From contig NC_088793.1 in assembly GCF_011386835.1 (NCBI RefSeq), positions 147,870,001 to 147,934,000 on the forward strand: a stretch of DNA of 64,000 nt. The letters are read 5' to 3'. Both the position numbers and the translations under genes were made by a program. Shown here one piece after another: positions 30,876 through 54,935 of this stretch (positions are counted from its first letter, which is position 1; the number at the start of each line of letters is the position of its first letter). Source of the stretch: Chrysemys picta bellii. Its lineage: Eukaryota. A model generated the notes under the pieces. That model did not search any database, was not told the origin of the DNA, and saw only the letters and a program-made list of their open reading frames with translations.

Positions 30876-31059
30876 NNNNNNNNNNNNNNNNNNNNNNNNN
30901 NNNNNNNNNNNNNNNNNNNNNNNNNNNNNNNNNNNNNNNNNNNNNNNNNNNNNNNNNNNNNNNNNNNNNNNNNNNNNNNNNNNNNNNNNNNNNNNNNNNN
31001 NNNNNNNNNNNNNNNNNNNNNNNNNNNNNNNNNNNNNNNNNNNNNNNNNNNNNNNNNNN
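30876..31059. other. Assembly gap (184 N)
   Basis: Run of N. Confidence 1.
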
Positions 31060-42300: not shown

Positions 42301-45300
42301 GTGTTGGCAAATTAGCACAAGGGGCTCTGCATTGAATTCTGCTCCTGGCGAGGACTGTTGGGTTACAGCAGGGTGCTGGGAGTCCAGACTCCTGGTTTCT
42401 GTCCCTGGCTCTTACCGCCTCATGGCATGCCCTTGTGTGAGTCATTTCCCTGCGTCCTGCCTCAGTTTCTCCACCTGTACAATAGGGATCCTGCTGCTGA
42501 CCCCTACCTCCCAGTGGACTGGGCTCAAGTACAATTGTGTGTATGTGCGAGGGAAGGGCCAGGGGTGACTGTCATGGAGATGTAGGGAGCCCGTCCCCCT
42601 GGAATCCTGTCCTGTCTCTTTTGGCTGGGGAAGCTAAATGCACTGTGAATTTGGGCTGTTTTCCCAGCTGAGTCTGACACGCTTTTCCCAACTCCCTGGG
42701 AAATGGCTGTAACTGGCACCCCAGAGAGAGCTAGCAAGCAAGGGGATGGTGCCCTGAGGGACACCAGCATCTGGGGGCAGCAAAGTACTGCAGGGAGAGA
42801 AGTGGAGAGCCCAGAGAAAAGCGAGGTGCAGGGTGCCAAGGGCATAGAAGGGACCCATAGGTGGTACTGGCAGAAAGCCATCAGCTGCCTTGTGGAGAGT
42901 GCAGAGGGCAGCAGCTACTTGGGAGGGAGGAGCCCAGGGAGCAGAAGCAGATGGGCTGCTCTGGGTGTGTGTGTGACAGGGCAGGAGGGGTGGGGATGGC
43001 AGCTGGCAAATATCTCCAGTGGCAGACATGGGACACTAGCTGGGGCTCTGAGTTACTACAGAGAATTCTTTCCCAGGTGTCTGGCTGGTGGGTCCCACCC
43101 ACATGCTCAAGGTCTAACTGATCATCATATTTGGGGTCGGGAAGGAATTTTCCCCCAGGTCAGATTGGCAGAGACCCTGGGGAATTTCTCCTTCCTCAGC
43201 AGCTTGGGGCACGGATCATTTGTGGGTTTGATCTAGAGTCAATAGTGGGTTCTCTGTAACTTGAAATCTTTAAATGAGGATTGGAGGACATCAATAGCTC
43301 AGCCAGCGGTTAGGGGCCTGTCACAGGAGTGGATGGGCGAGGTTCTGTGGCCGGCGACGTGCAGGAGGTCAGACTGGATGATCGTGCTGGTCCTTTCTGG
43401 CATAAAGTCTGAGTGGGAGCTAGGTCCAAGGGAAGAGCAGTTCACTGCTGGGGTGTGGAGGAGGTGGGAGAGGATGGAGCTGAGGGGTCTCCAGCCGGGA
43501 AGGAGGTTTCCCCTTCAGAGATGGGTAGGTGCTGGAGAAGTCCGAGAGGGGATCTGGTGAATGGGAGCGGGGGCGGGATCCTGTGCAGTTCCAATTAGAC
43601 GTTCCCTTGGTGCTGTTTTCCCGGCAGTGTGGCTTGGAGGAAACCATCTCCTCAATTGCAGCCTCCTTGTAAACAAACCCAGGCTGCTGCTACACAAACA
43701 GCTGGCTGGGGCAGAGGAGGAGCAGCGGGGAGGGCTGCACTGCTCGCAGGCAGTCTAGGGCTGGGCTCACAAAGGGCACCAAATGGGCTACAGTCCCCTC
43801 CATGGCAGCAGTGCCCAAGGCTGCCCCTTCCCTGGCCCCTCTCTGTCTCTTTCTCTTGCCCCCTCGGGCCTGCCCCATATGGTGCCATTGAAGCTCTGGA
43901 GTTCTATGGCATTTGCTTTGGGGTCTGGCCCTGTACCCACTCTGCCCTGGAATTGCCACCTGCCATCCTCCAGGCACGGCCAGCAGCAGGGAACTGAGAA
44001 TGCAGGAGCAGGGCTAAACACCCCCCGTAGCCAGTATGTGTCTCTGGCCCTTCCTGCCTCCTCCACGCCCCATACAATGCTTCCCCCATTACTGTTCAGG
44101 CTGTTTTGTTTGAATAAACTCTTGACAGCATGAGACAACGGGGAGCCTGTCCGGTCTGAGCCAGCCGGCCTGGCCAAGCTAGGATCCCCTGCTGCTGGGA
44201 GCTGCCTCTCTGAACCTCCCTCCCGGCAGTGGGGTCACATCGTCTGACTGCCCTCGCCCTCGCCCCCGAGCTACCTCGCCAGGCCACATCCCCGCTGGCA
44301 GGAGATGGTTCCAAAACAGCTCTATGGAACTCGGATGTGGCTGCATGTGGTTTGGCCTGGCTGATCCGCCGGAGGCCCTCCTTTCCCGGGGTGGGGCCGC
44401 TCAGTCAACAGGACGCTGGTTTTGGCTGTGCCCACAAACCCGCCGACTGGCCCGCCCCAATCCCGCAGCATACTTTGTGCCCACGACTGCCCCACCGCCG
44501 TGCCAGCCCAGCCCAATGTGCCCTGCAGGGTCCCGAGCTGAGGGGACAACGAAGGCTCGTGTCAGACGCAGGCAGCGAAACCTGGCTCAGGGACCTTAGG
44601 GTGACCCCATTGCAACCACTCTGGAGAGGCCTAGGTGGAACTGAGAGGAGCAGCTGGGATGTCCCAGCATCATGTCCATGGGGCACGTTGTCACACCCAG
44701 CTGGAGAAAGACAAAGATGGGCGTCCCACTCTGCGCTGAACCTGCCAAAGGGAAGGGACTGAGCAGGGCAGGTACCAGCCAGAACCGAAGTGTTCCCTTG
44801 GGAGGGCTCACCCCTGCATACTCAGCAGGCAGGAGAAGGGAGACTGACCAGAAACTGGCCAAGCCAGTGCCTCCGCCACTAGCTGGGGCAGGGGTCAGAG
44901 AGCATGGGGCAGGGGAGTTCAGGGAGCTGGTGAAAGCCGACCCGAAGTACGGGCATTTCCCATGGATGGCTGTCCCCTCAGGAGAGGGCGTGGGGCTGCA
45001 TGCGTGCAGGGCTTTCACAGCTGCCTTCAGCCTGTTGTTTTCCATCTGTTAGTTATTGACTCTGCAGAACCCTGGCTCAGCATTCTGGCTCCTGCCGCCG
45101 CCCAGCGCTCCAGCAGCACGAGTCAGCAGGCTGGAAGAGTCCCAGCCCAGTCCTAGGGAATGGGCCTGAAGGGGTTGCAAGAGCCAGGGACTGCGTCCCA
45201 GTGACCTGCCTGCTGACCCCGCTATTCTCCCTGGGGCCTAAGCCAGCAGCTCCAGCGCAGGAGCTCAGTGACTCCAGTCCTCCCCAGCCACATTCGCATT

Positions 45301-47857
45301 GATCGGGGGCGCAGGCAGTGCAAAGGGCATTGCAGGGCAGAGAGAGGGAGCCCGTGTCACTCATCAGCACCCCCTTTGAGTGGGTAGGCACCGCACTGAG
45401 CTGCCTGGGTTAGAAGGGGGGGCCTAGAGTTGAGTAGGACAATGGGAAGCTCCCTCAACAGGCTCCTTCCTAGCCCTTACCAGTGTGGCTCCCCCCTCCA
45501 CCCTCACCTCTTGCTGTCGGATGCACCTTAGTGCCCTGCGGGTGCCATGGGGAGACACCCCTCGCCTGCCTGGTTCCCTGGTGCCCTGTGGCACACTACC
45601 CACTCATAGGTCTGGGTTTTTCTCTCTCTCTCTCTCTCTCTCTCTCAGCCCGGGAAAGACAGCCGGCTCCTGCCCTTCATGGTGGCTGCCCGCATAGTCT
45701 TCATCCCCCTCTTCATGCTGTGCAACGTGCAGCCCCGCAGCCACATGCCCGTTTTCTTCCACCATGACGCCTGGTACATCAGCTTCATCATCCTCTTCTC
45801 CGTCTCCAATGGCTACCTGGCCAGCCTCTGCATGTGCTTTGGGCCCAAGTGAGTGTGACCTGAGGCGGGGGGAAGGGACCCAAGGGACCTCTTACCACGC
45901 AACAGCCCATGCTGCTGCACTGGGTACTGGCTGGTGGCAATTCTGCCTCTGGGCACAGCCCCTTATCCTGAAGGGACTGGAGGTTCCCCTATCTAATGGG
46001 TGCTTCTCCAGTGCCTTGGTGCAGTGGGTTAGGATCACTCTCCTCATGTTACAGAGGGAGAAATGGGGGGGGGGATTCACCCCAGGCCACCCAGGTGTCC
46101 TGGCTCCCAGTCCTGTGCTTCAGCCACAAGTCTTCTCCTTCCTCCACAGCCCAGAGCTGAGCTCAGACTTGTGCCTCCTAAGAGAGGAGTAAAAGCGACA
46201 GGGGCCAGGGCTGATCCCTGGATGGGGGGGCGGGGAGAGCTGCCTCCAGAGCTAGGCAGCCAAAGGCGACTGGCCCTGCAGAGCACTCGGCCAGGGACAC
46301 GGCCTCGTCCCCAGCGCAGGGAGCTGCTGGGCTCAGCCGGGTGGCCTGCAGTCTGTCAAGGCAGGGGGGATGCTGGCGCCGGGAGCTGCAGTGTGGCGCT
46401 TTGCCTGACACTTCGCAGGCGCGTTCTTTTTACGAGCCCATAACTCAGAGCTGGGCACTCATCCCAGCAGGGTGTGCGGATGGGATTACTGCTGTGGAGA
46501 AGCCCTGACGGGAAGCAGTCAGCACCCTCCCTGCCCTTCACTGTGGCTACCCCCTCGGCCCCCTTCCCTTCCAGAAGCAGGTGCCCTTCCTGCCCCCCTT
46601 TCCCTCTCCCCATCACCAGTGTGTGTGATTATCAAGTGGCAGCCATTCCAGCGCTCCTCCCTGCTCCTAGCCTGGCCGGCCTGGTTCCTAACCCCGCCCC
46701 CCTGCTGCACATACAGCGCGAGCTCAACCCCAGACTCCGCTTCAATCCCGTGTGACTGTGTGTGTGACACCCCGGCCCAGCCCCACCATTCCTCACACAG
46801 CCTGAAACAAACGTGCTCCTGGTTTGAGCACCACCCTCAGCGCAGACTTTTGCTCTTCCTGCCATGTTCCAGCAGAGGGCGCATGAGAGCACCACCGACT
46901 GCTTGGGCCGGGCCTACATACACTCTGCCAGTGCTTTTCCAACGCCTAACAGCTGGGCAGTTCAATGAACTCGCTCCCCGAGCGCATTCCCAGTGGAGCG
47001 AAAGGAGCCCAGGCCTCCTGCCTGCCTGCCACCATTGGTGGCCCTTTGCAGGCTGCTCCCCCTTACATGCCATCCTGTCCCCTCCTTCCCTACACTGTCC
47101 GTACCCCAGCCCTTGGGGGGCCTTGCAAACTGGACTAAACTGTTCCCTGTCTGGCACCTGAGGCTTCTTTCTGACGATAGAACAATTGGTCTCTAAAGGG
47201 CCCTGGCTCCCCTGGCCACAGGGCGGGGAGAAGAGCCTATGTGTGCCCCAGGATCGCCCCAACCCCTCACTCGGACCTACAAGCAGGGTTTAAAGCACGG
47301 ATCTGGGAGTCAGGAGACCTGGGTTCTCAACCCATTTCTGCTACAAGGGGTGGGGCATCCAGCAGAAATATCTTAACTGCTCTGTGCCTTGGTCTCCCCA
47401 TCTGTGTGGGGAGCCTAGAGCTGGGACAGCAGGAGGCAGGGTGGGAAGAGACGGGGGGGCAGCCTGCCTGCTCTAGTTCCCACATTGTTCTGCTGAAGTG
47501 CGCATTGAGAAGCCCTTTAGGTCCCTCCTAGTCCTTCTGACGGGGGTGGCGCAGGATCATTCCCCAAGGACAACTCCTAGTTCATTCCAGGTCCTCCTTC
47601 CCTTTCCCCTCAGCCCTGAGAATGGAGGGGGAGATGTGGGGAAGCTGCAGGGCACCGATTCCTGCAGAAGGGCTTAGGACAGGAGCCACCAAGGGTGGGG
47701 GCTGGTGCATAGTGCCGCTGGGCTGACGCTTCTCTCCTCCCCCAGGAAGGTGCTCAACCACGAAGCTGAGACGGCCGGAGCCATCATGGCATTTTTCCTC
47801 TCGCTGGGCCTGGCGCTGGGAGCCATGTTCTCCTTCCTCTTCCGGGTGGTGATCTAG
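36301..47857 (+). CDS. SLC29A1: Equilibrative nucleoside transporter 1 (ENT1), 12 coding exons, 456 aa (span includes introns)
   Basis: Coding exon lengths 29, 82, 191, 140, 135, 98, 97, 92, 109, 86, 200, 112 sum to 1371 nt. All junctions GT-AG and in phase. Peptides MTTSNGPSDRYKAVWLIFF...LPWNFFMTA, FGAILQGSLFGLAG, SNGYLASLCMCFGPK, ETAGAIMAFFLSLGLALGA are ENT1-type. Neighbour HSP90AB1 matches human synteny. Confidence 0.97.
37328..37341 (+). promoter_or_regulatory. CTCF consensus motif CCACTAGGGGGCAG
   Basis: Exact match to the CTCF core in context TGCCACTAGGGGGCAGTC. Binding is not shown. Confidence 0.55.
37545..38247 (+). mobile_element. CR1 LINE 3' fragment (intronic)
   Basis: IQRRTTRMIKRLENRPYSDRLKALNQFSLTKRRLRGDLI.VYKYL peptide and a tail GATCACAATGGTCCCTTCTG...AATCTCTGAATCT. 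Confidence 0.88.
38421..38550 (-). repeat. Two degenerate units of the 70-bp minisatellite family, reverse orientation
   Basis: GGGCTGCAGGTCAG...GAGCTGTGTGGGGGGAGCCCAAGGCTGGGATAGCAGGGGGGCTGCAGGTCAG is the reverse complement of the 51175 array unit. Confidence 0.8.
38782..38863 (+). CDS. SLC29A1: ENT1 coding exon 2 (YKAVWLIFFTLGLGTLLPWNFFMTATR)
   Basis: CACAG| acceptor, |GTAAGG donor, 82 nt. Confidence 0.96.
39040..39230 (+). CDS. SLC29A1: ENT1 coding exon 3 (YFTNRL...FNNFMTLCAMLPLLIFTCLNSFLHQR)
   Basis: TTTCAG| acceptor, |GTGAGT donor, 191 nt. Confidence 0.96.
39484..39623 (+). CDS. SLC29A1: ENT1 coding exon 4 (IPQKVRILGSLVAILLVF...KIILIN)
   Basis: TGCAG| acceptor, |GTGAGT donor, 140 nt. 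Confidence 0.96.
40050..40184 (+). CDS. SLC29A1: ENT1 coding exon 5 (FGAILQGSLFGLAG...AMICAIA)
   Basis: TTGCAG| acceptor, |GTGAGT donor, 135 nt. Confidence 0.96.
40594..40691 (+). CDS. SLC29A1: ENT1 coding exon 6 (GSLLADSAFGYFITACVVVLLAIGSYILLPRL)
   Basis: CCCAG| acceptor, |GTAAGG donor, 98 nt. Confidence 0.95.
40936..41032 (+). CDS. SLC29A1: ENT1 coding exon 7 (DFFRFHSMKDKTEY...LETKIDLIKK)
   Basis: TGCAG| acceptor, |GTGAGG donor, 97 nt, phase consistent. Confidence 0.93.
41299..41390 (+). CDS. SLC29A1: ENT1 coding exon 8 (EPNGVEQ...KPSVFSIFKK)
   Basis: CTACAG| acceptor, |GTACGT donor, 92 nt. Confidence 0.93.
41507..41615 (+). CDS. SLC29A1: ENT1 coding exon 9 (IWIMALSVCLVFTVTIGVFPAVT...SSKW)
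   Basis: CTCCAG| acceptor, |GTGAGT donor, 109 nt. Confidence 0.96.
42081..42166 (+). CDS. SLC29A1: ENT1 coding exon 10 (MYFIPVSCFLMFNVFDWLGRSLTAVCLW)
   Basis: CTCCAG| acceptor, |GTAAGT donor, 86 nt. Confidence 0.96.
42355..42510 (+). mobile_element. MIR-like SINE
   Basis: GGGAGTCCAGACTCCTGGTTTCTGTCCCTGGCTC...GCCTCAGTTTCTCCACCTGTACAATAGGGAT. Confidence 0.65.
43060..43415 (+). mobile_element. CR1 3' UTR fragment
   Basis: GGGGTCGGGAAGGAATTTTCCCCCAGGTCAGATTGGCAG...GGAGGTCAGACTGGATGATCGTGCTGGTCCTTTCTGGC. Confidence 0.75.
45621..45646 (+). repeat. (TC)13 microsatellite forming the polypyrimidine tract of the ENT1 coding exon 11 acceptor
   Basis: TTTT(TC)13AG|CCC directly before 45649. Confidence 0.9.
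45649..45848 (+). CDS. SLC29A1: ENT1 coding exon 11 (PGKDSRLLP...SNGYLASLCMCFGPK)
   Basis: TCAG| acceptor, |GTGAGT donor, 200 nt. Confidence 0.96.
46869..46882 (+). promoter_or_regulatory. CTCF consensus motif CCAGCAGAGGGCGC
   Basis: Exact match to the CTCF core, in the last ENT1 intron. Binding is not shown. Confidence 0.55.
47285..47405 (+). mobile_element. MIR-like SINE fragment
   Basis: GGGAGTCAGGAGACCTGGGTTCTC...CTTAACTGCTCTGTGCCTTGGTCTCCCCATCTGT. Confidence 0.6.
47746..47857 (+). CDS. SLC29A1: ENT1 last coding exon (KVLNHEAETAGAIMAFFLSLGLALGAMFSFLFRVVI*)
   Basis: CCCAG| acceptor, TAG stop at 47855-47857, 112 nt. Confidence 0.96.
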
Positions 47858-49243
47858 TGGGGCGGCAGCATGGACACTGAGGCCATGCTTGGCTCAGCTT
47901 CTCATCCCCTGGCCAGCGCATAGAGGCTACAGTGCTGGGGGGGACGTCTCTTGTGCACTGCTATGAACTCTCACTGCCTTAGCAGACCTTATGTCCTGTG
48001 ACCTGGGGGGTGACCTCCACCTGCCCTGAGGATGGCTTGGGGCTCCTATGGCTGGGTCACTTTGCCCTACCCCTGGCTTGTGTGATGGCTCCAGGACTTG
48101 TGTGCCATCATGTGCCCCCGTACTATGTGTGACCGCTGGATCCCATGCACACACAGATCTCCCCCTGCCCAGTGTTGTGTGACTTTCTCCCCACACACAG
48201 ATGTCAGGATCCTGTCTCGAATTCATATCACACCCGCCAAGTGTGGGGTCTTTGGCTCAGAAGAGAAGAGAGTGCCTGAGGTCACTGCTCCCTTGGGGGC
48301 TGCTTGTGACTTGCTCTCCCCATCCCGGCCTCCTCTCAAGGGGTCCCTGGAGAGTTCACCCTTGTCCAGTTTCTCTCCCCCTGCCCCCAGCAAGGGAAAT
48401 GAACTAACCCCCATGCCTGGCTGAGGGAAGGGGAGCCCTGCAGACTGCACCCCTGCCCCCTCCCCCCTATATACGTGTGTGCTGCCCATCCCTATAGCTG
48501 CTGATCCTCTCAGACATTTGTGGCTTTATTCCTTCCCACTCCCTCCCGCGAGCTAGGGAATGTCATGACCCCAGACTCCAGATGGGGAACTGGGGCAGGG
48601 CTGGAGATAGAGCCCAGGTGGCTGGAGTGCCTGTCAGATGCCTCAATTACTGCACCTCCTTCCTCTTCTCCTGCCCTGGCCTTTCCCCTGCTCCTGACCT
48701 CCCTCCAGGTGCCATTCACCCCAGCTGCTTGCACTGCCCCAGACTTTGATCTGCCCCCTGCGGCAGTCCCTGCCTTCCCCAGCAGGAGGTGGTACAGGAG
48801 TGGAGCAGGCACGCTAGCAGTGGGGGGCGCCCAGAGAGTGAGAAGACCAATGCAGGACAGCACTGCCACGAGCCACCCCATGTTCCGCGAGGCCTTGCCT
48901 GGCTGAGTGCCCCTTGGTGCGGGCGGGGGCCCGGCCCGTTTGTCTCTGTAAATGTATCTGTACAGTTGCCATTTTCTATACAAAGAGTGAACATGCCTCC
49001 TCGTGTGTCTGCCACTGACTCCCACGCCGCCACTGGGGGAGGGGAGCGCGAGCACCACGCAGGCCTCAGCCACAGGCGTCGGCCCCAGCAGAGCCGGGCC
49101 CCCAGGGCTGAGCGTGGCCGGGGGCTGGTGTGGAGACATCTTGGTGTCTCCTTCCTCAACCCCTACTCAGCTCACTCCCACTTTGGGTTCCCATCTGGGG
49201 GTGGGGCCTCCATGGGCAGTGAGGGGGTAGGGGGTCCCAACCA

Positions 49244-49478
49244 CAGGGCCGGCTCCAGGCACCAGCTTCTCAAGCAGGTGCTTGGTGTGGCCGCTCCGGA
49301 GAGGGGCGGCACGTCCAGGTATTCGGCGGCAATTCGGCGGATGGTCCCTCACTCCGCCTGGGAGTGAAGGACCTCCTGCTGAATTGCCGCCGCAGATCGC
49401 GATCACGATTGCGGCTTTTGTTTTTTTGTTTTTTTGTTTTGGCTGCTTGGGGCAGCCAAAACCCTGGAGCCGGCCCTG
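49244..49478. mobile_element. hAT MITE, 235 bp, same family as 211-433
   Basis: TIRs CAGGGCCGGCTCCAGG/CCTGGAGCCGGCCCTG. Perfect 8-bp TSD CCCAACCA (49236-43, 49479-86). Confidence 0.93.
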
Positions 49479-49720
49479 CCCAACCATATCCCCAGCATGT
49501 GAACACATGGCCAGTACTTTGAGTGCTGAGAGCAGGCTAGGGGGGCGGCGGTCTGGGCCGGTACTGGCAGGGTGGGGGTGCTGGGGTCTGATGCCCTGAG
49601 AGGTGCTGGAGAGTTGCTAAGCTAATCCATTCTGCAAAACTTGCCCTGGCAGGTGCATTGGCTGAGCTGTTTCGCCACCTAGTGACCACAATAGTGAACT
49701 GCAGCGTTCTGTCCTGTCTC

Positions 49721-49925
49721 AAAAAGAAGAACAGGAGGACTTGTGGCACCTTAGAGACTAACAAATTTATTAGAGCATAAGCTTTCGTGGGCTACTGCAT
49801 CCGAAGAAGTGGGCAGTAGCCCACGAAAGCTTATGCTCTAATAAATTTGTTAGTCTCTAAGGTGCCACAAGTACTCCTGTTCTTCTTTTTGCGGATACAG
49901 ACTAACACGGCTGTTACTCTGAAAC
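49721..49925 (+). mobile_element. Penelope-like-derived fold-back element with a 12-bp target duplication
   Basis: 78-nt inverted arms 49721-49798 and 49813-49890 (1 mismatch), 14-nt spacer, 35-nt tail. Flanked by CTGTCCTGTCTC at 49709-20 and 49926-37. Confidence 0.85.
49797..49836 (+). ncRNA. Minimal type I hammerhead ribozyme-like motif
   Basis: GCAT-CCGAAGA-A-GTGGGC(AGTA)GCCCAC-GAA-AGCT-T-ATGC: helix I GCAT/ATGC, helix II 6 bp, palindromic helix III AGCT. U4->C deviation. Activity is untested. Confidence 0.55.
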
Positions 49926-50197
49926 CTGTCCTGTCTCAGCATCCCTGCACCTTTGCCTCTCCTGGAAGCAGTTTCCCCAGAAACATTCTCCCAGCTCCTA
50001 GGGACAGCGATGGTTCCTCTGAACACCAGGACTACCTGCCCCTGGCACACACATACACATGCCAGCTTCACACTAGCATAGCCCACTGATGCCCCCCATC
50101 TACACCGCCTGTAACCCATGTCCAGGATAGCAACTATCCCTGGCACCAGACCTAGTTGTGCAGAACCCCCAGCATTTGCTCTTTGATTCTCCCCTGA

Positions 50198-50450
50198 GGT
50201 ACGTGTACAGCCAATGAAGGTGGGATTGCAGCTCGCGGAGGGATACTCACGTGAGCTAGCACAACCAAACCTAGCAGTGAAGTCACAGCCGCACAGGTGC
50301 AGGCTCTGGATGGGACTATATCCCAGGTGCAGGCTGTGCTGAAACCCAGGCTGCTGCAGCTACCTGCTCTTCTTAGCCACGCTAAATTCAAACTGGCTGG
50401 GGCACATGCCGAGCTGCAGTCACACCTCCTATTGCAGTGTAGACGTAGCC
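50198..50450. mobile_element. Harbinger-like MITE
   Basis: TGA|GGTACGTGTACAG ... AGTGTAGACGTAGCC termini. Confidence 0.65.
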
Positions 50451-51174
50451 TTGGGAATTTGTGTTACCTCAAGTTAATTGAGTGCCATCGTCCCAGCCTA
50501 GGGTGAACCACAATTGTTTGTGTCTTGGACAAAACATTCCTGGAATGTCTAGCTTAGTACACACAGTTGTGTTCGGTGCTGTGCATTCATTAGCAATGAC
50601 CTCCAGTTAAAGCAGGATCACAACCACTAATGTAGCCGCAGGCCAGGTCTGCACTCAGAAGTAATGTTGACCCAGCTATCTTGCTCGGGTGTGAAAAATC
50701 GAGTGTAGATAAGCCCATACCCTGTACTGCAGGCGTCTGGGTCTGTCCCCAAAACACACATCACAGCCATGGAGGGGGTGAATGGCCCATGGGATGGTTA
50801 TGCCACTGATCTTTCCTCCCTTCAGATGAGTAAGCCCTGGTGACACCGCCTCTGCCCCAGCAGCCTGCTAGCGAAGGCCCAATAGTTCATCTCATCAGCC
50901 CTGAAGACCACCCCCACTCACACCCCACCATACATCAGCCCTGTGCTGGAGGGACCGCAGGCTTTGTGGCACACTCCTTGGCCTTACTGTTGGGAGCGGG
51001 GGGGGGGGGGGGGGAGGCGGGCTGAGGAGAGGCTCATTACAATAGGGGTTTGTGAAGGCTGCTTTTGTCTGCCTAGTGCTGTACACACCCTGAACACATG
51101 ATTCACAGGGGTCACCAACCAGCTGAACAATAGGAGTGACATACACTCAACACTGACCTGAGCTGCTATTCTTC

Positions 51175-52560
51175 CCACACAGCGCTGCCCGTGCCCCTCA
51201 CCTGCAGCCCCCCTGCTATCCCTCTGGGCTCCCCTCACACAGCTCTGCCCGTGCCCCTCACCCCTGACCTGCAGCCAGGGCCGGCTCTGGCTTTTTTGCC
51301 GCCCCAGGCAAAAAAGCCTCCCGCTGCCCCCCGCCCCCAGCGCGGCAGAGGAGGGCACCGAGCCCGGCCGCAGGCTGCTCTCCCCAACCGGCCAGAGTGC
51401 CGGGGGGAGGGCGGCGAGCCTGCTGCGGCTCCGCTGGCGGCCGGAGCCCCGGGAGGAGGGCGGAGAGCCCAGCCGCGGCTCCGCTCTCCCCGGCGGCCAG
51501 AGTGCCGGAGGGGGGGCGGAGAGCCCGCCGCGGCTCCGCTCTCCCCGGCGGCCAGAGCGCCGGGGGGAGGGCGGAGTGGCGGCCAGAGCGCCGGGTGGAG
51601 GGCGGAGAGCCCGCCGCGGCTCCACTCTCCCCGGCGGCCAGAGTGCCGGAGGGAGGGCGGCGAGCCTGCCGCAGCTCCGCTCTCCCCGGTGGCCAGAGAG
51701 ATGGGGGGAGGGCGGAGTGGTGGCCAGAGCGCCGGGGGGTGCCGGAGAGCCCAGCCGGGGCTCCGCTCTCCCCGGCGGCCGGAGTCGGAGCACCGCGCCG
51801 CCCCCCTCCAGGTGCCGCCCCAAGCACAAGCTTGGTGGGCTGGTGCCTGGAGCCGGCCCTGCCTGCAGCCCCCCTGCTATCCCTCTGGGCTCCCCTCACA
51901 CAACTCTGCCAGTGCCCCTCACCCCTGACCTGCAGCCCCCCTGCTATCCCAGCCCTGGGCTCCCTTCACACAGCTCTGCCAGTGCCCCTCACCCCTGACC
52001 TGCAGCCCCCTGCTATCCCAGCCCTGGGCTCCCCTCACATAGCTCTGCCAGTGCCCCTCACCCCTGACCTGCAGCCCCCCGGCTATCCCAGCCCTGGGCT
52101 CCCCTCACACAGCTCTGCCCGTGCCCCTCACCCCTGACCTGCAGCCCCCTGCTATCCCAGCCCTGGGCTCCCCTCACATAGCTCTGCCAGTGCCCCTCAC
52201 CCCTGACCTGCAGCCCCCCTGCTATCCCAGCCCTGGGCTCCCCTCACATAGCTCTGCCAGTGCCCCTCACCCCTGACCTGCAGCCCCCCTGCTATCCCAG
52301 CCCTGGGCTCCCCTCACACAGCTCTGCCAGTGCCCCTGACCCCTGACCTGCAGCCCCCCCTGCTATCCCAGCCCTGGGCTCCCCACACAGCTCTGCCAGT
52401 GCCCCTCACCCCTGACCTGCAGCCCCCCTGCTATCCCAGCCCTGGGCTCCCCACACAGCTCTGCCAGTGCCCTTCACCCCTGACCTGCAGCCCCACTGCT
52501 ATCCCAGCCCTGGGCTCCCAACATACAGCTTTGCCCATGCCCCTCACCTCTGACCTATAG
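51175..52560 (+). repeat. Minisatellite, ~68-70 bp unit, ~11-12 copies, interrupted by a hAT element
   Basis: Unit GCAGCCCCCCTGCTATCCCAGCCCTGGGCTCCCCTCACACAGCTCTGCCAGTGCCCCTCACCCCTGACCT. Unit starts at 51204, 51271/51865, 51932, 52002, 52071, 52141, 52210, 52280, 52350, 52419, 52487. Confidence 0.95.
51276..51861. mobile_element. hAT non-autonomous element (586 bp) with GC-rich internal tandem repeats, nested in the minisatellite
   Basis: TIRs CAGGGCCGGCTC ... GAGCCGGCCCTG. Perfect 8-bp TSD CCTGCAGC (51268-75, 51862-69). Internal repeats of GCTCCGCTCTCCCCGGCGGCCAGAGTGCCGG. Confidence 0.92.
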
Positions 52561-54559
52561 TCCATCCCCCCTCCCCACACACTATTCCAGTGCTGGGTCC
52601 CTGGAGGTCTGCATATCCCAGTTTGCATCTGGCTCAGCACAGAGCTCATGCCCATGGCCTCCGGAAAGTCAGGCAGAATCGTGAGCTCATCGGCCAGGTT
52701 TGTAACAACAGTCACGTTATCCAGTCATTCTACCCATGGCCCTGAGCCCTAGAAGAGCTGCTGTCTCCCTAAAGCCAGAAAACAAGGGCCCTGTGTGTGA
52801 GAGGAGCCAGGGTGGGGACACACACACCAGACATCCAACCCCAGGTCCCAGCCATTCCCCTGTGTTTCCCTTCCTGCCCTGGCATCTCATTCCTACCTCT
52901 CCCCACCCACCTGTCCCAGGGTTACGGACACTGTAACCATGCATTCAGTCTGGAGATGGGACAGCTGAGCTGGCAGAGGAACCTCCCACAGGACAGGATG
53001 TATCCAGGGTGGAGATGGCATGGCAGGGTTGTGCTGGCATCTCAGCTGGGTTCAGATCAGTTCCACTCTCTGTGAGGAGGCCGCCAGAGGACACATACTC
53101 CTGTCCTAGGTCCCCAGGAGTGTCCATCCCAGACTAACAAGGTCACTTCCAGCCTAGGGCTCCCCCTGGACATGCTCGGGGGGGGGGAGGAACTGGGGAA
53201 ACCCCCAACAGTGGGGGACTCTGGCCTCCTCATAGGCATTTGCTGTCTGATTCCAAAGGGTTTGGCCCAAATGAAGCTGATTGGTGCTCCAGTACCCCCT
53301 TACCTGTTGCCTGTTCGGGAAGCAGGGTCTCTCCAGAGTAGCACCTGCCCAGCTGCAGACTGGAAACTTGCAAGAAAAGCAGGAGAAGCCCATTGGGAGA
53401 GACCGGAAGTGTGGTGCACGGGGTCTCCTCAGCTGACCCCTGTTCTCAGCTCTCCTTTGGGTTTCTGGAAAAGCCATCATCACCCCAATGGTGACATTTG
53501 CCTCAATCCAGAGGTGAGGCTCTCCGGTTTGTCACATGTCTGCTGGGTGCTCTCATCCCTAACGGGAAGCACTTCCTTCCCTTCCTATAAGTCTTGGTCC
53601 CCACTTTCCCTGAGCTGCCCCCGATGGGATGGCGTTGGAATTGCTCCCAAGGGTCAGAGGCCCAATACTTCTGGCAACAGAGATTCTCCTTGTGGTTGGA
53701 CCTTACGGAGCAGAAGGCTCTAAGTCCTGTCCCCACTTCCCAGCACGGGGTTTGAGGGGTGCCACAGAGCAACCCCTGCTCAGTCAGGTTTGTTACAGTG
53801 GAGGCTGCATTGTGACTGAAGTGGCTCCCCCCTGATGTGGCCCAGCCAGTGTGGATGGGGATGGGACCCAAACTGGGTCACAGCATCAATCCCTGCCATG
53901 ATGGATTGATCATGGTTACACCCGCCCCATCTGCAGTGGCCAGACCCCACCAGGGAGGAATGTGCTCCAGTCACAGTGGAGACGCCTTTACTCAATTCAC
54001 ACTGTTCAGAGGGGCTGAGAAGCCCAGAGATCCCCAGGGCAACTACATGGGTCCCAGGTTCGCAGTCCCTCCCTGTTGCAGGGCCATCGGTTGTGTTTCT
54101 GCCGGGTCCCTGCTGGCAACACAGCAATGCAAATACTTGTCATACTGGAGATTGGGCACTAGGTGGTGCCATGGGGAGGGGTCCAGAGCTGCAAGCAATT
54201 CCATTCAATGAGACTTAATTGACATGACAAACTATTCAGGTGTTGCCAAAGGGTAGGTAGATCCTGTGTCTGAGGGAGATCCCTGCACTACCAGCCTCGG
54301 GGGTGGGGAGGAAGTTATGACTCAGAGACAACCCCTTCCACCCCATTTTGAGGCCCAAACTGGTTCACCAAGGAGGACAGCAGTTACTGGCTCAGGTAGC
54401 TGACAGACATCACCCTCCTCTTCTTCCCCTCCTTTCTCTTGTTTGTTTTGGAAACAGGAGCTTAACGTTAATGAGTGTTTGCAAACAAACCAAAAGCGGG
54501 AGCGAGGGAGGGAAAGAGACAGGCAAGTGTGGAAACAAGCCGAGGTCTGGACAAATGGA

Positions 54560-54935
54560 GTGATGTCTAGTGGTTAGAGCAGGGGTGGCTGGGAGTCAGG
54601 ACTCCTGGGTTCTATTCCAATAGTTTGTCCTTATCTAGCATTTTCTGTTGGAGGGGCTTGTTTTTTTTCACCGATAAACCAAGGTCATTAAATCAGGGCA
54701 GCTCCCTAGCAGGGACACGCTTAAACCAATTTAAGGCCACTCCAGGGTGTTGCATCAAGATGGAGATAATTAAATCAGTGCAAAAACCATGCAGCCCAGG
54801 CCTTTCAGTGCTTTACAAGCAGGAGCATTTTACAGAGGGGGACTCTGAGTTCCGGGGGTGGGGAGGTGCCCCCAGGTCACACAGTGAATGGGTGACAGAG
54901 CCAGGAGTCCTGTCCCTTGGCTCTAATCACTAGAC
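54560..54935. mobile_element. Two MIR-like SINE heads in opposite orientation (~54560-54620 +, ~54880-54935 -) flanking a degenerate MITE
   Basis: TCTAGTGGTTAGAGC...GGGAGTCAGGACTCCTGGGTTCTATTCC, and the reverse GAGCCAGGAGTCCTG...CTCTAATCACTAGACC. Confidence 0.55.

What the first reader, a model, noticed from the sequence alone, without database searches (positions are those of the whole stretch)
49709..49937. Sense-strand minimal hammerhead ribozyme locked in a 78-bp hairpin just downstream of SLC29A1
Seen: an insertion with a 12-bp TSD whose + strand reads helix I GCAT (49797) - core CCGAAGA plus an extra A - helix II GTGGGC/GCCCAC - GAA - palindromic AGCT - U17 (49832) - helix I ATGC. AATAAA follows 8 nt later (49840). 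The motif is overlapped by a 78-nt near-perfect inverted copy that is transcribed first. Established: Penelope-like retroelements carry minimal type I hammerheads with tiny palindromic helix III that cleave as dimers; an extra A after A9 is tolerated in a viroid hammerhead; hammerheads in mammalian Clec2 3' UTRs reduce expression. Inference: read-through ENT1 RNA could either self-cleave (termination or decay) or fold into long dsRNA (ADAR/Dicer substrate) that masks the ribozyme, a possible fold-back on/off switch. Caveats: U4->C, the need for dimerisation, and hairpin competition may make it inactive.
Basis: partly seen in the sequence, partly recalled or inferred. Interest (0 to 1): 0.8.

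Follow-up and report, generated by a model that had tools for sequence, protein, structure and literature searches.

The report
Young Penelope-like fold-back retroelement insertion
This is one recent copy of a very abundant Penelope-like retroelement, inserted as a hairpin about 1.85 kb past the ENT1 stop codon; its hammerhead-like motif is an inherited and probably inactive relic, so the locus is ordinary.

Summary
A 204-bp insertion (49722-49925) lies between perfect 13-bp target-site duplications. It has 79-nt inverted arms (one mismatch) around a 14-nt loop. A 40-nt minimal type-I hammerhead-like motif sits on the + strand at 49797-49836. The ENT1 (SLC29A1-like) stop codon is about 1.85 kb upstream on the same strand.

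The interpretation as a ribozyme/dsRNA switch for ENT1 is not supported.
- The motif has every accessory trait of Penelope-like-element (PLE) minimal hammerheads, but C replaces the conserved U4. No Rfam hammerhead model matches.
- No second copy lies within 64 kb, so there is no partner for dimerisation.
- Any fold that keeps helices I and II is 36 kcal/mol less stable than the hairpin.
- The repeat family is very abundant: about 50,000 contigs aligned in one DNA run. Many other fold-back copies have different junctions.
- The two outer ends of this copy match the two PLE reverse-transcription start sites, 34-36 nt apart (the "tail").
- A contig from a closely related organism carries the precise empty site, so the insertion is recent.
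- No RNA contig covers the flanks of the insertion in the organism that carries it.

The scan has already noted this element type more than 130 times elsewhere in this genome. Verdict: an ordinary member of a known kind, of low interest.

The parts
49709..49721 (.). Left target-site duplication, CTGTCCTGTCTCA
   Evidence: Direct repeat D2, 13 nt, 100% identical to 49926-49938. A contig from organism B joins 49708 directly to 49926, which is the empty site with a single copy of this 13-mer (record 23).
49722..49798 (-). Left arm: inverted (antisense) copy of element positions 49813-49889. It lacks the 34-36-nt tail and holds only the 3' half of the hammerhead-like motif, in antisense.
   Evidence: Inverted repeat I1, 79 nt, 99% complementary; BLAST of the element against the window. 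Its outer end corresponds to about 49889, where many family copies also end (loose ends at 49878, 49884 and 49889).
49797..49836 (+). Minimal type-I hammerhead-like motif (PLE min-HHR type) with C at core position 4; predicted cleavage site after T 49832
   Evidence: Read from the sequence. It is the only hit of the relaxed descriptor in the window, with 0 of 100 shuffles. No Rfam hammerhead hit at E<=10. The isolated 40-mer adopts helices I and II at -14.1 kcal/mol against an MFE of -14.3.
49797..49925 (+). Right, sense-oriented PLE fragment, from the 5' edge of the hammerhead motif to the distal reverse-transcription start site
   Evidence: 207 contigs in X1 and 131 in X10 diverge from this copy just before 49797. 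Family copies end at 49924-49930. The distance from the cut site to the 3' end is 93 nt, against about 89 nt in Poseidon_Ac.
49840..49845 (+). AATAAA hexamer carried by the element
   Evidence: It is the only AATAAA or ATTAAA on the + strand between 45000 and 54687. In the hairpin it pairs with TTTATT at 49766-49771.
49890..49925 (+). PLE 'tail': the segment between the two alternative 3' termini, present only in the right arm
   Evidence: The arms end at equivalents of about 49889 and at 49925, a difference of 34-36 nt. Family 3' ends are bimodal. Frangieh et al. 2024 describe two RT start sites about 34 nt apart that define the PLE tail.
49926..49938 (.). Right target-site duplication
   Evidence: D2.
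47678..47857 (+). Open frame 47678-47854 holding the last coding exon of the ENT1 (SLC29A1-like) gene, then the TAG stop codon (context, not part of the element). The match to ENT1 starts about 40 nt inside the frame; the exon's 5' boundary was not mapped.
   Evidence: Pfam Nucleoside_tran E 1.9e-12, profile positions 267-308 of 309. Aligns to the C-terminus of human ENT1, 6ob6. TAG follows GTGATC.

Best explanation
The feature is a recent, heavily 5'-truncated insertion of a very abundant Penelope-like retroelement (PLE) or a PLE-derived short element. It consists of two head-to-head cDNA copies of the element's 3' region. The right copy (49797-49925, sense) starts at the distal reverse-transcription start site and so includes the 34-36-nt 'tail'. 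The left copy (49722-49798, antisense) starts at the proximal site and has no tail. Most likely both strands of a 13-bp staggered cut primed reverse transcription, and the two cDNAs were joined at a 3-nt microhomology (TGC, 49796-49798) (inferred). This gives a 79-bp hairpin and a 13-bp TSD. The hammerhead-like motif is simply the part of the PLE template that the right copy reached. It is an inherited retroelement motif, not something evolved for ENT1. At this locus it is very probably catalytically silent, for three reasons: C at core position 4, no helix III and no partner for dimerisation, and sequestration of its 3' two-thirds in a far more stable hairpin. The AATAAA and the hairpin are likewise family features. 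Any effect on ENT1 RNA would be incidental to a new insertion.
For: - Anatomy: perfect 13-bp TSD and 79-nt arms with one mismatch.
- Family abundance: 49,881 contigs of DNA run X1 and 26,318 of X10 align to the stretch at >=80% identity. Summed word depth over the element runs to millions, against 18-53 in unique flanks.
- Fold-back is generic: more than 250 joint classes link left-arm to right-arm positions at varying points (for example 49765->49856 and 49778->49850). Many of these lack the hammerhead region altogether (table 5).
- PLE traits of the motif named by Cervera & de la Pena 2014 (PMC4209133) are all present: one extra nucleotide between A9 and 10.1, a G10.1-C11.1 pair, a 6-bp helix II, a 4-bp helix I, and palindromic 15.2-16.2. 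That paper reports such motifs in turtle and snakes.
- Geometry matches the Anolis PLE PAc (PMC11167929). PAc: cut site at about nt 30, RT start sites at about nt 85 and 119, a tail of about 34 nt, and both DNA strands cleaved and extended in vitro. Here: cut site to arm ends is about 57 and 93 nt, and family 3' ends cluster at 49878-49889 and 49924-49930.
- Youth: organism B contig record 23 joins 49708 to 49926, the precise empty site.
- Inactivity: the canonical-core descriptor gives no hit. There is no Rfam hammerhead hit. U4C 'considerably decreases activity in vitro' (PMC3088659). PLE min-HHRs show no activity as monomers and only low activity as dimers, or need the PLE protein. The element occurs once in the 64-kb window. 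The hairpin is -154.4 kcal/mol, against -118.3 for the best fold that keeps helices I and II.
- The inserted copy spans the predicted cut site, so its template RNA was not cleaved there. This agrees with PAc, where unprocessed RNA is the substrate.
Against: - No other copy could be read base by base, so PLE membership rests on motif architecture, end geometry and abundance. No linked RT/EN ORF was seen.
- I could not determine whether C4 is private to this copy or the family consensus. If it is the consensus, the family's motif may keep some protein-assisted activity.
- The target site here is not AT-rich, unlike the PAc preference, although the flanks of other copies are AT-rich (table 7).
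- A U4C hammerhead retains enough activity in vivo for viroid infectivity, so zero activity is not proven.
- The dual-priming origin of the fold-back is inferred from one copy plus the family end distribution. Snap-back self-priming is not excluded.
Confidence: 0.85

Rival explanations
1. The motif is an active self-cleaving hammerhead that cuts ENT1 read-through or long-3'UTR RNA after 49832, with the left arm acting as a fold-back off-switch.
For: The motif is complete apart from U4, sits on the sense strand relative to ENT1, and is far from a chance match. The isolated 40-mer folds into helices I and II. U4C is tolerated in vivo in one viroid. Probable RNA runs of organism B hold sequence across the (empty) site, so the region may be transcribed.
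Against: The core carries U4C with no stabilising loop-loop contacts. There is no helix III and no second copy in 64 kb for dimerisation. PLE min-HHRs are inactive as monomers. Hammerhead-compatible folds are 36 kcal/mol worse than the hairpin, and the left arm is transcribed first. There is no Rfam hit. The architecture is generic to thousands of copies, and the fold-back junction position varies. The insertion is too young for selection to have acted (empty site). No RNA contig covers the flanks in organism A (X37).
Confidence: 0.03
2. The ribozyme is irrelevant, but the insertion incidentally alters ENT1 RNA in carriers. It would supply a 79-bp dsRNA (a substrate for ADAR or Dicer) and the only canonical AAUAAA for several kb, changing 3'-end choice, editing or stability.
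For: AATAAA at 49840 is the only AATAAA or ATTAAA on the + strand between 45000 and 54687. The hairpin is long and nearly perfect. Fourteen small, probably RNA, runs from 5 studies hold 48-70% of the words of 47650-49990. An organism B contig spans the site and continues beyond 50200.
Against: The runs' RNA status is a guess. In organism A (X37) only 48279-48943 is covered, and nothing flanks the insertion. The hexamer is base-paired inside the hairpin. No editing-like differences could be assessed. Such an effect would be a by-product of a new insertion, not a designed element.
Confidence: 0.1
3. The element has the same identity, but the hairpin arose by snap-back. The 3' end of the first-strand cDNA folded back on itself and self-primed, rather than both target strands priming on RNA.
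For: Snap-back gives exactly this topology: an inverted copy joined at a short microhomology. The arms are 78/79 identical, as expected if one was copied from the other.
Against: Under snap-back the outer end of the left arm should fall at an arbitrary position. Instead it falls at about 49889, the position where many independent family copies terminate (49878-49889). That position is 34-36 nt from the other terminus, matching the two RT start sites and the two-strand extension of PAc.
Confidence: 0.2

Closest known systems
Minimal hammerhead motifs (min-HHRs) of metazoan Penelope-like elements (Cervera & de la Pena 2014, PMC4209133)
   Same: Type-I topology with an open helix I of 4 bp. One extra nucleotide between A9 and 10.1. 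A G10.1-C11.1 pair and a long (6-bp) helix II. No helix III hairpin, only a palindromic AGCU that could pair between two molecules. Massive genomic copy number, mostly as single truncated copies, some in opposite orientation close together. Reported in reptiles (turtle, snakes).
   Different: Core position 4 is C, not U. This copy is not seen inside a full PLE with an RT-EN ORF. Self-cleavage is untested.
Poseidon_Ac (PAc) PLE of Anolis carolinensis (Frangieh et al. 2024, PMC11167929)
   Same: The hammerhead sits at the pLTR/ORF junction, with the cut site 55-90 nt upstream of two alternative RT start sites about 34 nt apart (the 'tail'). Both target strands are used as primers. The inserted copies contain the uncleaved hammerhead.
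   Different: There is no detectable sequence similarity outside the core, judged by eye against File S1. In this copy core position N7 is A, so the AUG that opens the PAc ORF inside the core is absent, and that frame stops after 18 codons. The target site is not AT-rich.
Hammerheads in rodent Clec2 3' UTRs (Martick et al. 2008, as cited in PMC6155905)
   Same: A hammerhead motif downstream of a coding region on the sense strand.
   Different: The Clec2 ribozymes are full, discontinuous, high-activity hammerheads with tertiary contacts, conserved among species. This one is a minimal, core-mutated, hairpin-sequestered relic of a very recent transposon insertion.
Animal non-LTR retrozymes (tandem type-I HHR repeats; PMC7229834; bioRxiv 10.64898/2026.07.22.740005)
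   Same: Non-autonomous, HHR-bearing sequences related to PLE pLTRs. They are absent from birds and mammals.
   Different: Retrozymes are head-to-tail tandem arrays that yield circular RNAs. This is a single inverted-duplicate insertion with a TSD.

Membership tests
Hammerhead ribozyme (catalytic core) | Conserved core C3-U4-G5-A6-N7-G8-A9 ... G12-A13-A14, A15.1-U16.1, H17 | tested here: not met
   All positions match except position 4, which is C (49802) instead of U. The descriptor with the canonical core gives 0 hits in the window; with position 4 free it gives this one site. U4C 'considerably decreases activity in vitro' (PMC3088659).
Hammerhead ribozyme (catalytic core) | Match to curated covariance models (Rfam Hammerhead_1, _3, _II, HH9, HH10) | tested here: not met
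   No hammerhead family is listed at E<=10 on 901-nt and 66-nt stretches, or at gathering score on the whole window. This is weak evidence, because PLE min-HHRs lack the helix III hairpin those models expect (my inference).
Hammerhead ribozyme (catalytic core) | Site-specific self-cleavage 3' of H17 | not testable with these tools
   Needs in vitro transcription and cleavage assays or 5'/3'-end mapping.
PLE minimal hammerhead (min-HHR) | Extra unpaired nucleotide between A9 and 10.1; G10.1-C11.1; helix II 6-8 bp; helix I 4-5 bp; palindromic 15.2-16.2 and no helix III loop | tested here: met
   Extra A at 49808; G49809-C49824; a 6-bp helix II; a 4-bp helix I (GCAU/AUGC); AGCU at 49828-49831. 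The criteria are from PMC4209133.
PLE minimal hammerhead (min-HHR) | Family-level covariation in helices I and II among copies | not tested
   Other copies could not be read base by base. Read laying shows only that 82% of family depth has T at loop position 49815. No copies were found in the metagenome or viral collections.
Penelope-like element insertion | 'Tail' signature: two alternative 3' termini 30-40 bp apart, from internal RT initiation | tested here: met
   The arm termini in this copy differ by 34-36 nt. Family contigs diverge after 49878, 49884 and 49889, and after 49924 and 49930, in four runs (table 7). The criterion is from PMC11167929.
Penelope-like element insertion | Linked ORF with telomerase-like RT and GIY-YIG endonuclease in full-length copies | not tested
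   No full-length copy lies in the window, and none was retrievable from the accessible collections.
Penelope-like element insertion | Target-site duplication and 5' truncation, with frequent inverted or tandem partial copies | tested here: met
   13-bp TSD; a precise empty site in organism B (record 23); many other fold-back junctions in the family (table 5).
microRNA precursor (MIR2084, mir-4861, mir-569) | Score at or above the Rfam gathering threshold | tested here: not met
   55.5, 43 and 42.5 bits against thresholds of 100, 100 and 110, with hits on both strands. These are generic long-hairpin matches.

The most novel reading that the evidence does not exclude
In individuals that carry it, this insertion places a 79-bp perfect dsRNA and the only canonical AAUAAA within several kb into ENT1 read-through or long-3'UTR RNA. 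That would give a presence/absence polymorphism altering ENT1 3'-end formation, editing or stability. Separately, fold-back copies like this one could be in vivo footprints of PLE reverse transcription primed from both target strands at the two mapped start sites.
Probability: 0.1. Interest if true: 0.35.

Novelty: new member of a known kind. Interest (0 to 1): 0.12.

Why it matters
It matters little for ENT1 or for ribozyme biology. The locus is one of a very large number of copies of a known kind of retroelement motif, and nothing points to a function at this locus.

There are two modest points of value.
- The copy illustrates cleanly how PLE fold-backs may arise. Its two outer ends sit at the two reverse-transcription start sites defined in vitro for an Anolis PLE. 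A genome-wide census could test this.
- The result tells the scan that 'hammerhead locked in a hairpin' findings in this genome are a generic by-product of PLE insertion. They should be judged at the family level, not locus by locus.

Tried and rejected
- Rfam scans at three scales found no hammerhead. The miRNA-family hits are all far below gathering scores and occur on both strands, so I rejected them as generic hairpin matches.
- BLAST of the element against the window found no other copy, so no family alignment or covariation test was possible locally.
- Exact-pattern scans of metagenome contigs (two patterns) and viral contigs found nothing.
- The supplement of Cervera 2014 is not held, and Lunse et al. 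2017 (PMC5785218) is not held. I therefore could not compare with published reptile min-HHR sequences.
- Read laying shows family variants only where they pass its display filter, and 43 rows were hidden. I could not establish C versus U at 49802 in the family. I recall a very similar turtle repeat that also reads CCGA at this point, but that is memory, not a test.
- I first read the fall in depth between 49815 and 49796 as showing that most copies lack the 5' half of the motif. I dropped this, because contigs that begin at 49797 do not count at 49796 and mismatch-rich ends may be clipped.
- I considered the end of the X37 contig at 48943 as a poly(A) site. I rejected it: it falls in a GC-rich run with no signal.
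- I inferred that organism C also has the empty site. Contigs 15 and 16 end at 49721 and start at 49926 with 17 unaligned letters, which would be a 30-nt k-1 overlap. This is inference only.
- Word shares (0.94 in X3 of organism B, against the empty site in X25 of organism B) hint at polymorphism but do not prove it.

Full report
**1. The observation**

- A perfect 13-bp direct repeat, CTGTCCTGTCTCA, lies at 49709-49721 and 49926-49938. It brackets a 204-bp insert.
- Inside, arms 49720-49798 and 49813-49891 are 79 nt long and 99% complementary. They are separated by 14 nt.
- The + strand reads as follows:
  - helix I: GCAU, 49797-49800
  - core: C3 49801, C4 49802, G5 A6 A7 G8 A9 49803-49807
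  - one extra A: 49808
  - helix II: GUGGGC 49809-49814, loop AGUA, GCCCAC 49819-49824
  - GAA: 49825-49827
  - AGCU: 49828-49831
  - U17: 49832
  - helix I: AUGC, 49833-49836
- AATAAA follows at 49840.

I wrote an RNAmotif-style descriptor for the minimal hammerhead and ran it on both strands of the window.
- With the canonical CUGANGA core it finds nothing.
- With position 4 left free it finds exactly this site.
- It finds nothing in 100 locally composition-matched shuffles.

So the motif is real and not a chance match. It deviates from the hammerhead core at U4.

**2. Gene context**

Two open frames on the + strand, 45610-45849 and 47678-47854, match Pfam Nucleoside_tran (E 2.3e-26 and 1.9e-12). 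The second reaches the end of the profile. Both align best to human ENT1, PDB 6ob6, through its C-terminus. A TAG stop follows at 47855.

The insertion therefore begins about 1.85 kb downstream of the ENT1 stop codon, on the sense strand. Whether this lies inside the 3' UTR is open.

**3. What the element is**

Laying contigs from four public runs on 47600-50200 at >=80% identity shows a very abundant repeat.
- 49,881 contigs of DNA run X1 and 26,318 of X10 align to the stretch, which also holds a second repeat at 49244-49478.
- Summed word depth over the element runs to millions. Unique flanks have 18-53.
- More than 250 joint classes connect left-arm to right-arm positions at different points (for example 49765->49856 and 49778->49850). 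Fold-back copies with variable junctions are therefore common, and many lack the hammerhead region.
- Family copies diverge from this one at recurrent points: just before 49797; after 49878, 49884 and 49889; and after 49924 and 49930. The sequences beyond those points are heterogeneous and AT-rich, as genomic flanks would be.

The motif has all the accessory traits that Cervera & de la Pena (PMC4209133) list for the minimal hammerheads of Penelope-like elements:
- a nucleotide between A9 and 10.1
- a G10.1-C11.1 pair
- a long helix II and a short helix I
- palindromic 15.2-16.2 with no helix III loop

That paper reports such motifs in turtle and snakes.

The geometry also matches the Anolis PLE PAc (Frangieh et al. 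2024, PMC11167929).
- In PAc the cut site lies at about nt 30. Reverse transcription starts at two sites, about nt 85 and 119, which define a tail of about 34 nt. The protein cleaves and extends both DNA strands.
- Here the predicted cut site (after 49832) is 93 nt from the right end (49925). It is about 57 nt from the position equivalent to the outer end of the left arm (about 49889).
- The two ends differ by 34-36 nt. They coincide with the two clusters of family 3' termini.

I conclude that this is a 5'-truncated PLE-type insertion made of two head-to-head cDNAs, one started at each RT start site. They are joined at a TGC microhomology (49796-49798). The dual-priming step is inferred, and snap-back self-priming remains possible. 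The insert spans the predicted cut site, so its template RNA was uncleaved, as in PAc.

**4. Age**

Record 23 of run X25 (organism B) aligns to 49449-49708 and then directly to 49926-50200. This is the precise empty site with one copy of the 13-mer.

Contigs of organism C end at 49721 and start at 49926 with 17 extra letters. That fits a 30-nt unitig overlap across an empty site, but this is my inference.

With a perfect TSD and 78/79 arm identity, the insertion is recent and lineage-specific. It may be polymorphic: word shares differ among runs.

**5. Is the ribozyme likely to work here?**

It is unlikely, for five reasons.
- **Core defect.** U4C 'considerably decreases activity in vitro'. 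It is tolerated in a viroid hammerhead, a type thought to be offset by tertiary contacts outside the core (PMC3088659). This minimal motif has no such contacts.
- **Class behaviour.** PLE min-HHRs show no cleavage as monomers and only low activity as dimers or trimers. The PAc motif needs its protein, and no cleaved ends are seen in RNA-seq.
- **No partner.** The element occurs once in 64 kb. The antisense arm holds only the 3' half of the motif.
- **Hairpin competition.**
  - The whole transcript folds at -154.4 kcal/mol as the hairpin.
  - The best structure retaining helices I and II is -118.3 kcal/mol.
  - The isolated 40-mer does adopt the hammerhead secondary structure (-14.1 against an MFE of -14.3).
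  - The left arm is transcribed first.
- **No model match.** No Rfam hammerhead model matches. This is weak evidence for this minimal type.

**6. Transcription**

Fourteen small runs that are probably RNA, from five studies, hold 48-70% of the words of 47650-49990.
- In organism B a low-depth contig spans the empty site and runs beyond 50200. The region may be part of a long 3' UTR or read-through there.
- In organism A, the carrier, run X37 covers only 48279-48943 of the unique sequence. It covers nothing next to the insertion.

Transcription through the element is thus not shown.

One curiosity is that the element's AATAAA is the only AATAAA or ATTAAA on the + strand between 45000 and 54687. 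It is a family feature and is base-paired in the hairpin.

**7. Comparison and verdict**

The element works like, and by architecture belongs with, PLE minimal hammerhead-bearing insertions. As a hammerhead it fails the core test at U4.

The scan's own first-stage notes list more than 130 similar 'hammerhead in Penelope fold-back' observations elsewhere in this genome. These are unchecked, but one search is consistent with them.

This is an ordinary member of a known kind. The proposed ENT1 switch is not supported. A residual possibility, about 10%, is an incidental effect of the hairpin or the poly(A) signal on ENT1 RNA in carriers.

Noticed in passing
window 49248-49478: A second very abundant repeat lies just upstream. 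It is a roughly 230-bp MITE-like element with 14-bp terminal inverted repeats (GGGCCGGCTCCAGG ... CCTGGAGCCGGCCC) and an internal (TTTTGTTT)n run. Summed depth is in the millions in DNA runs of organisms A and C. In 20 contigs of X1, sequence like 49884 is joined to sequence like 49244, so the two repeats are adjacent at other loci too.
   Followed up: partly
window 45000-54687, + strand: There is no AATAAA or ATTAAA on the ENT1 sense strand for about 9.7 kb, apart from the one brought in by the insertion at 49840. The native ENT1 poly(A) signal must be non-canonical or distant. A cluster of three UGUA motifs lies at 48947-48966.
   Followed up: partly
window 51348-51785 and 51857-52556: There are GC-rich minisatellites downstream of ENT1. 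One has 55/86/141-bp periods (75-78% GC region). The other is a 70-bp unit repeated about 10 times at 94% identity.
   Followed up: no
window 49797 (5' edge of the hammerhead-like motif): Hundreds of family contigs (207 in X1, 131 in X10) stop matching this copy exactly before 49797, and their upstream sequences are heterogeneous and AT-rich. This suggests that many copies have their 5' end at the edge of the hammerhead motif. [quoted passage not shown]
   Followed up: partly
window 30876-31059: A run of 184 N (assembly gap or masked stretch); left untouched.
   Followed up: no
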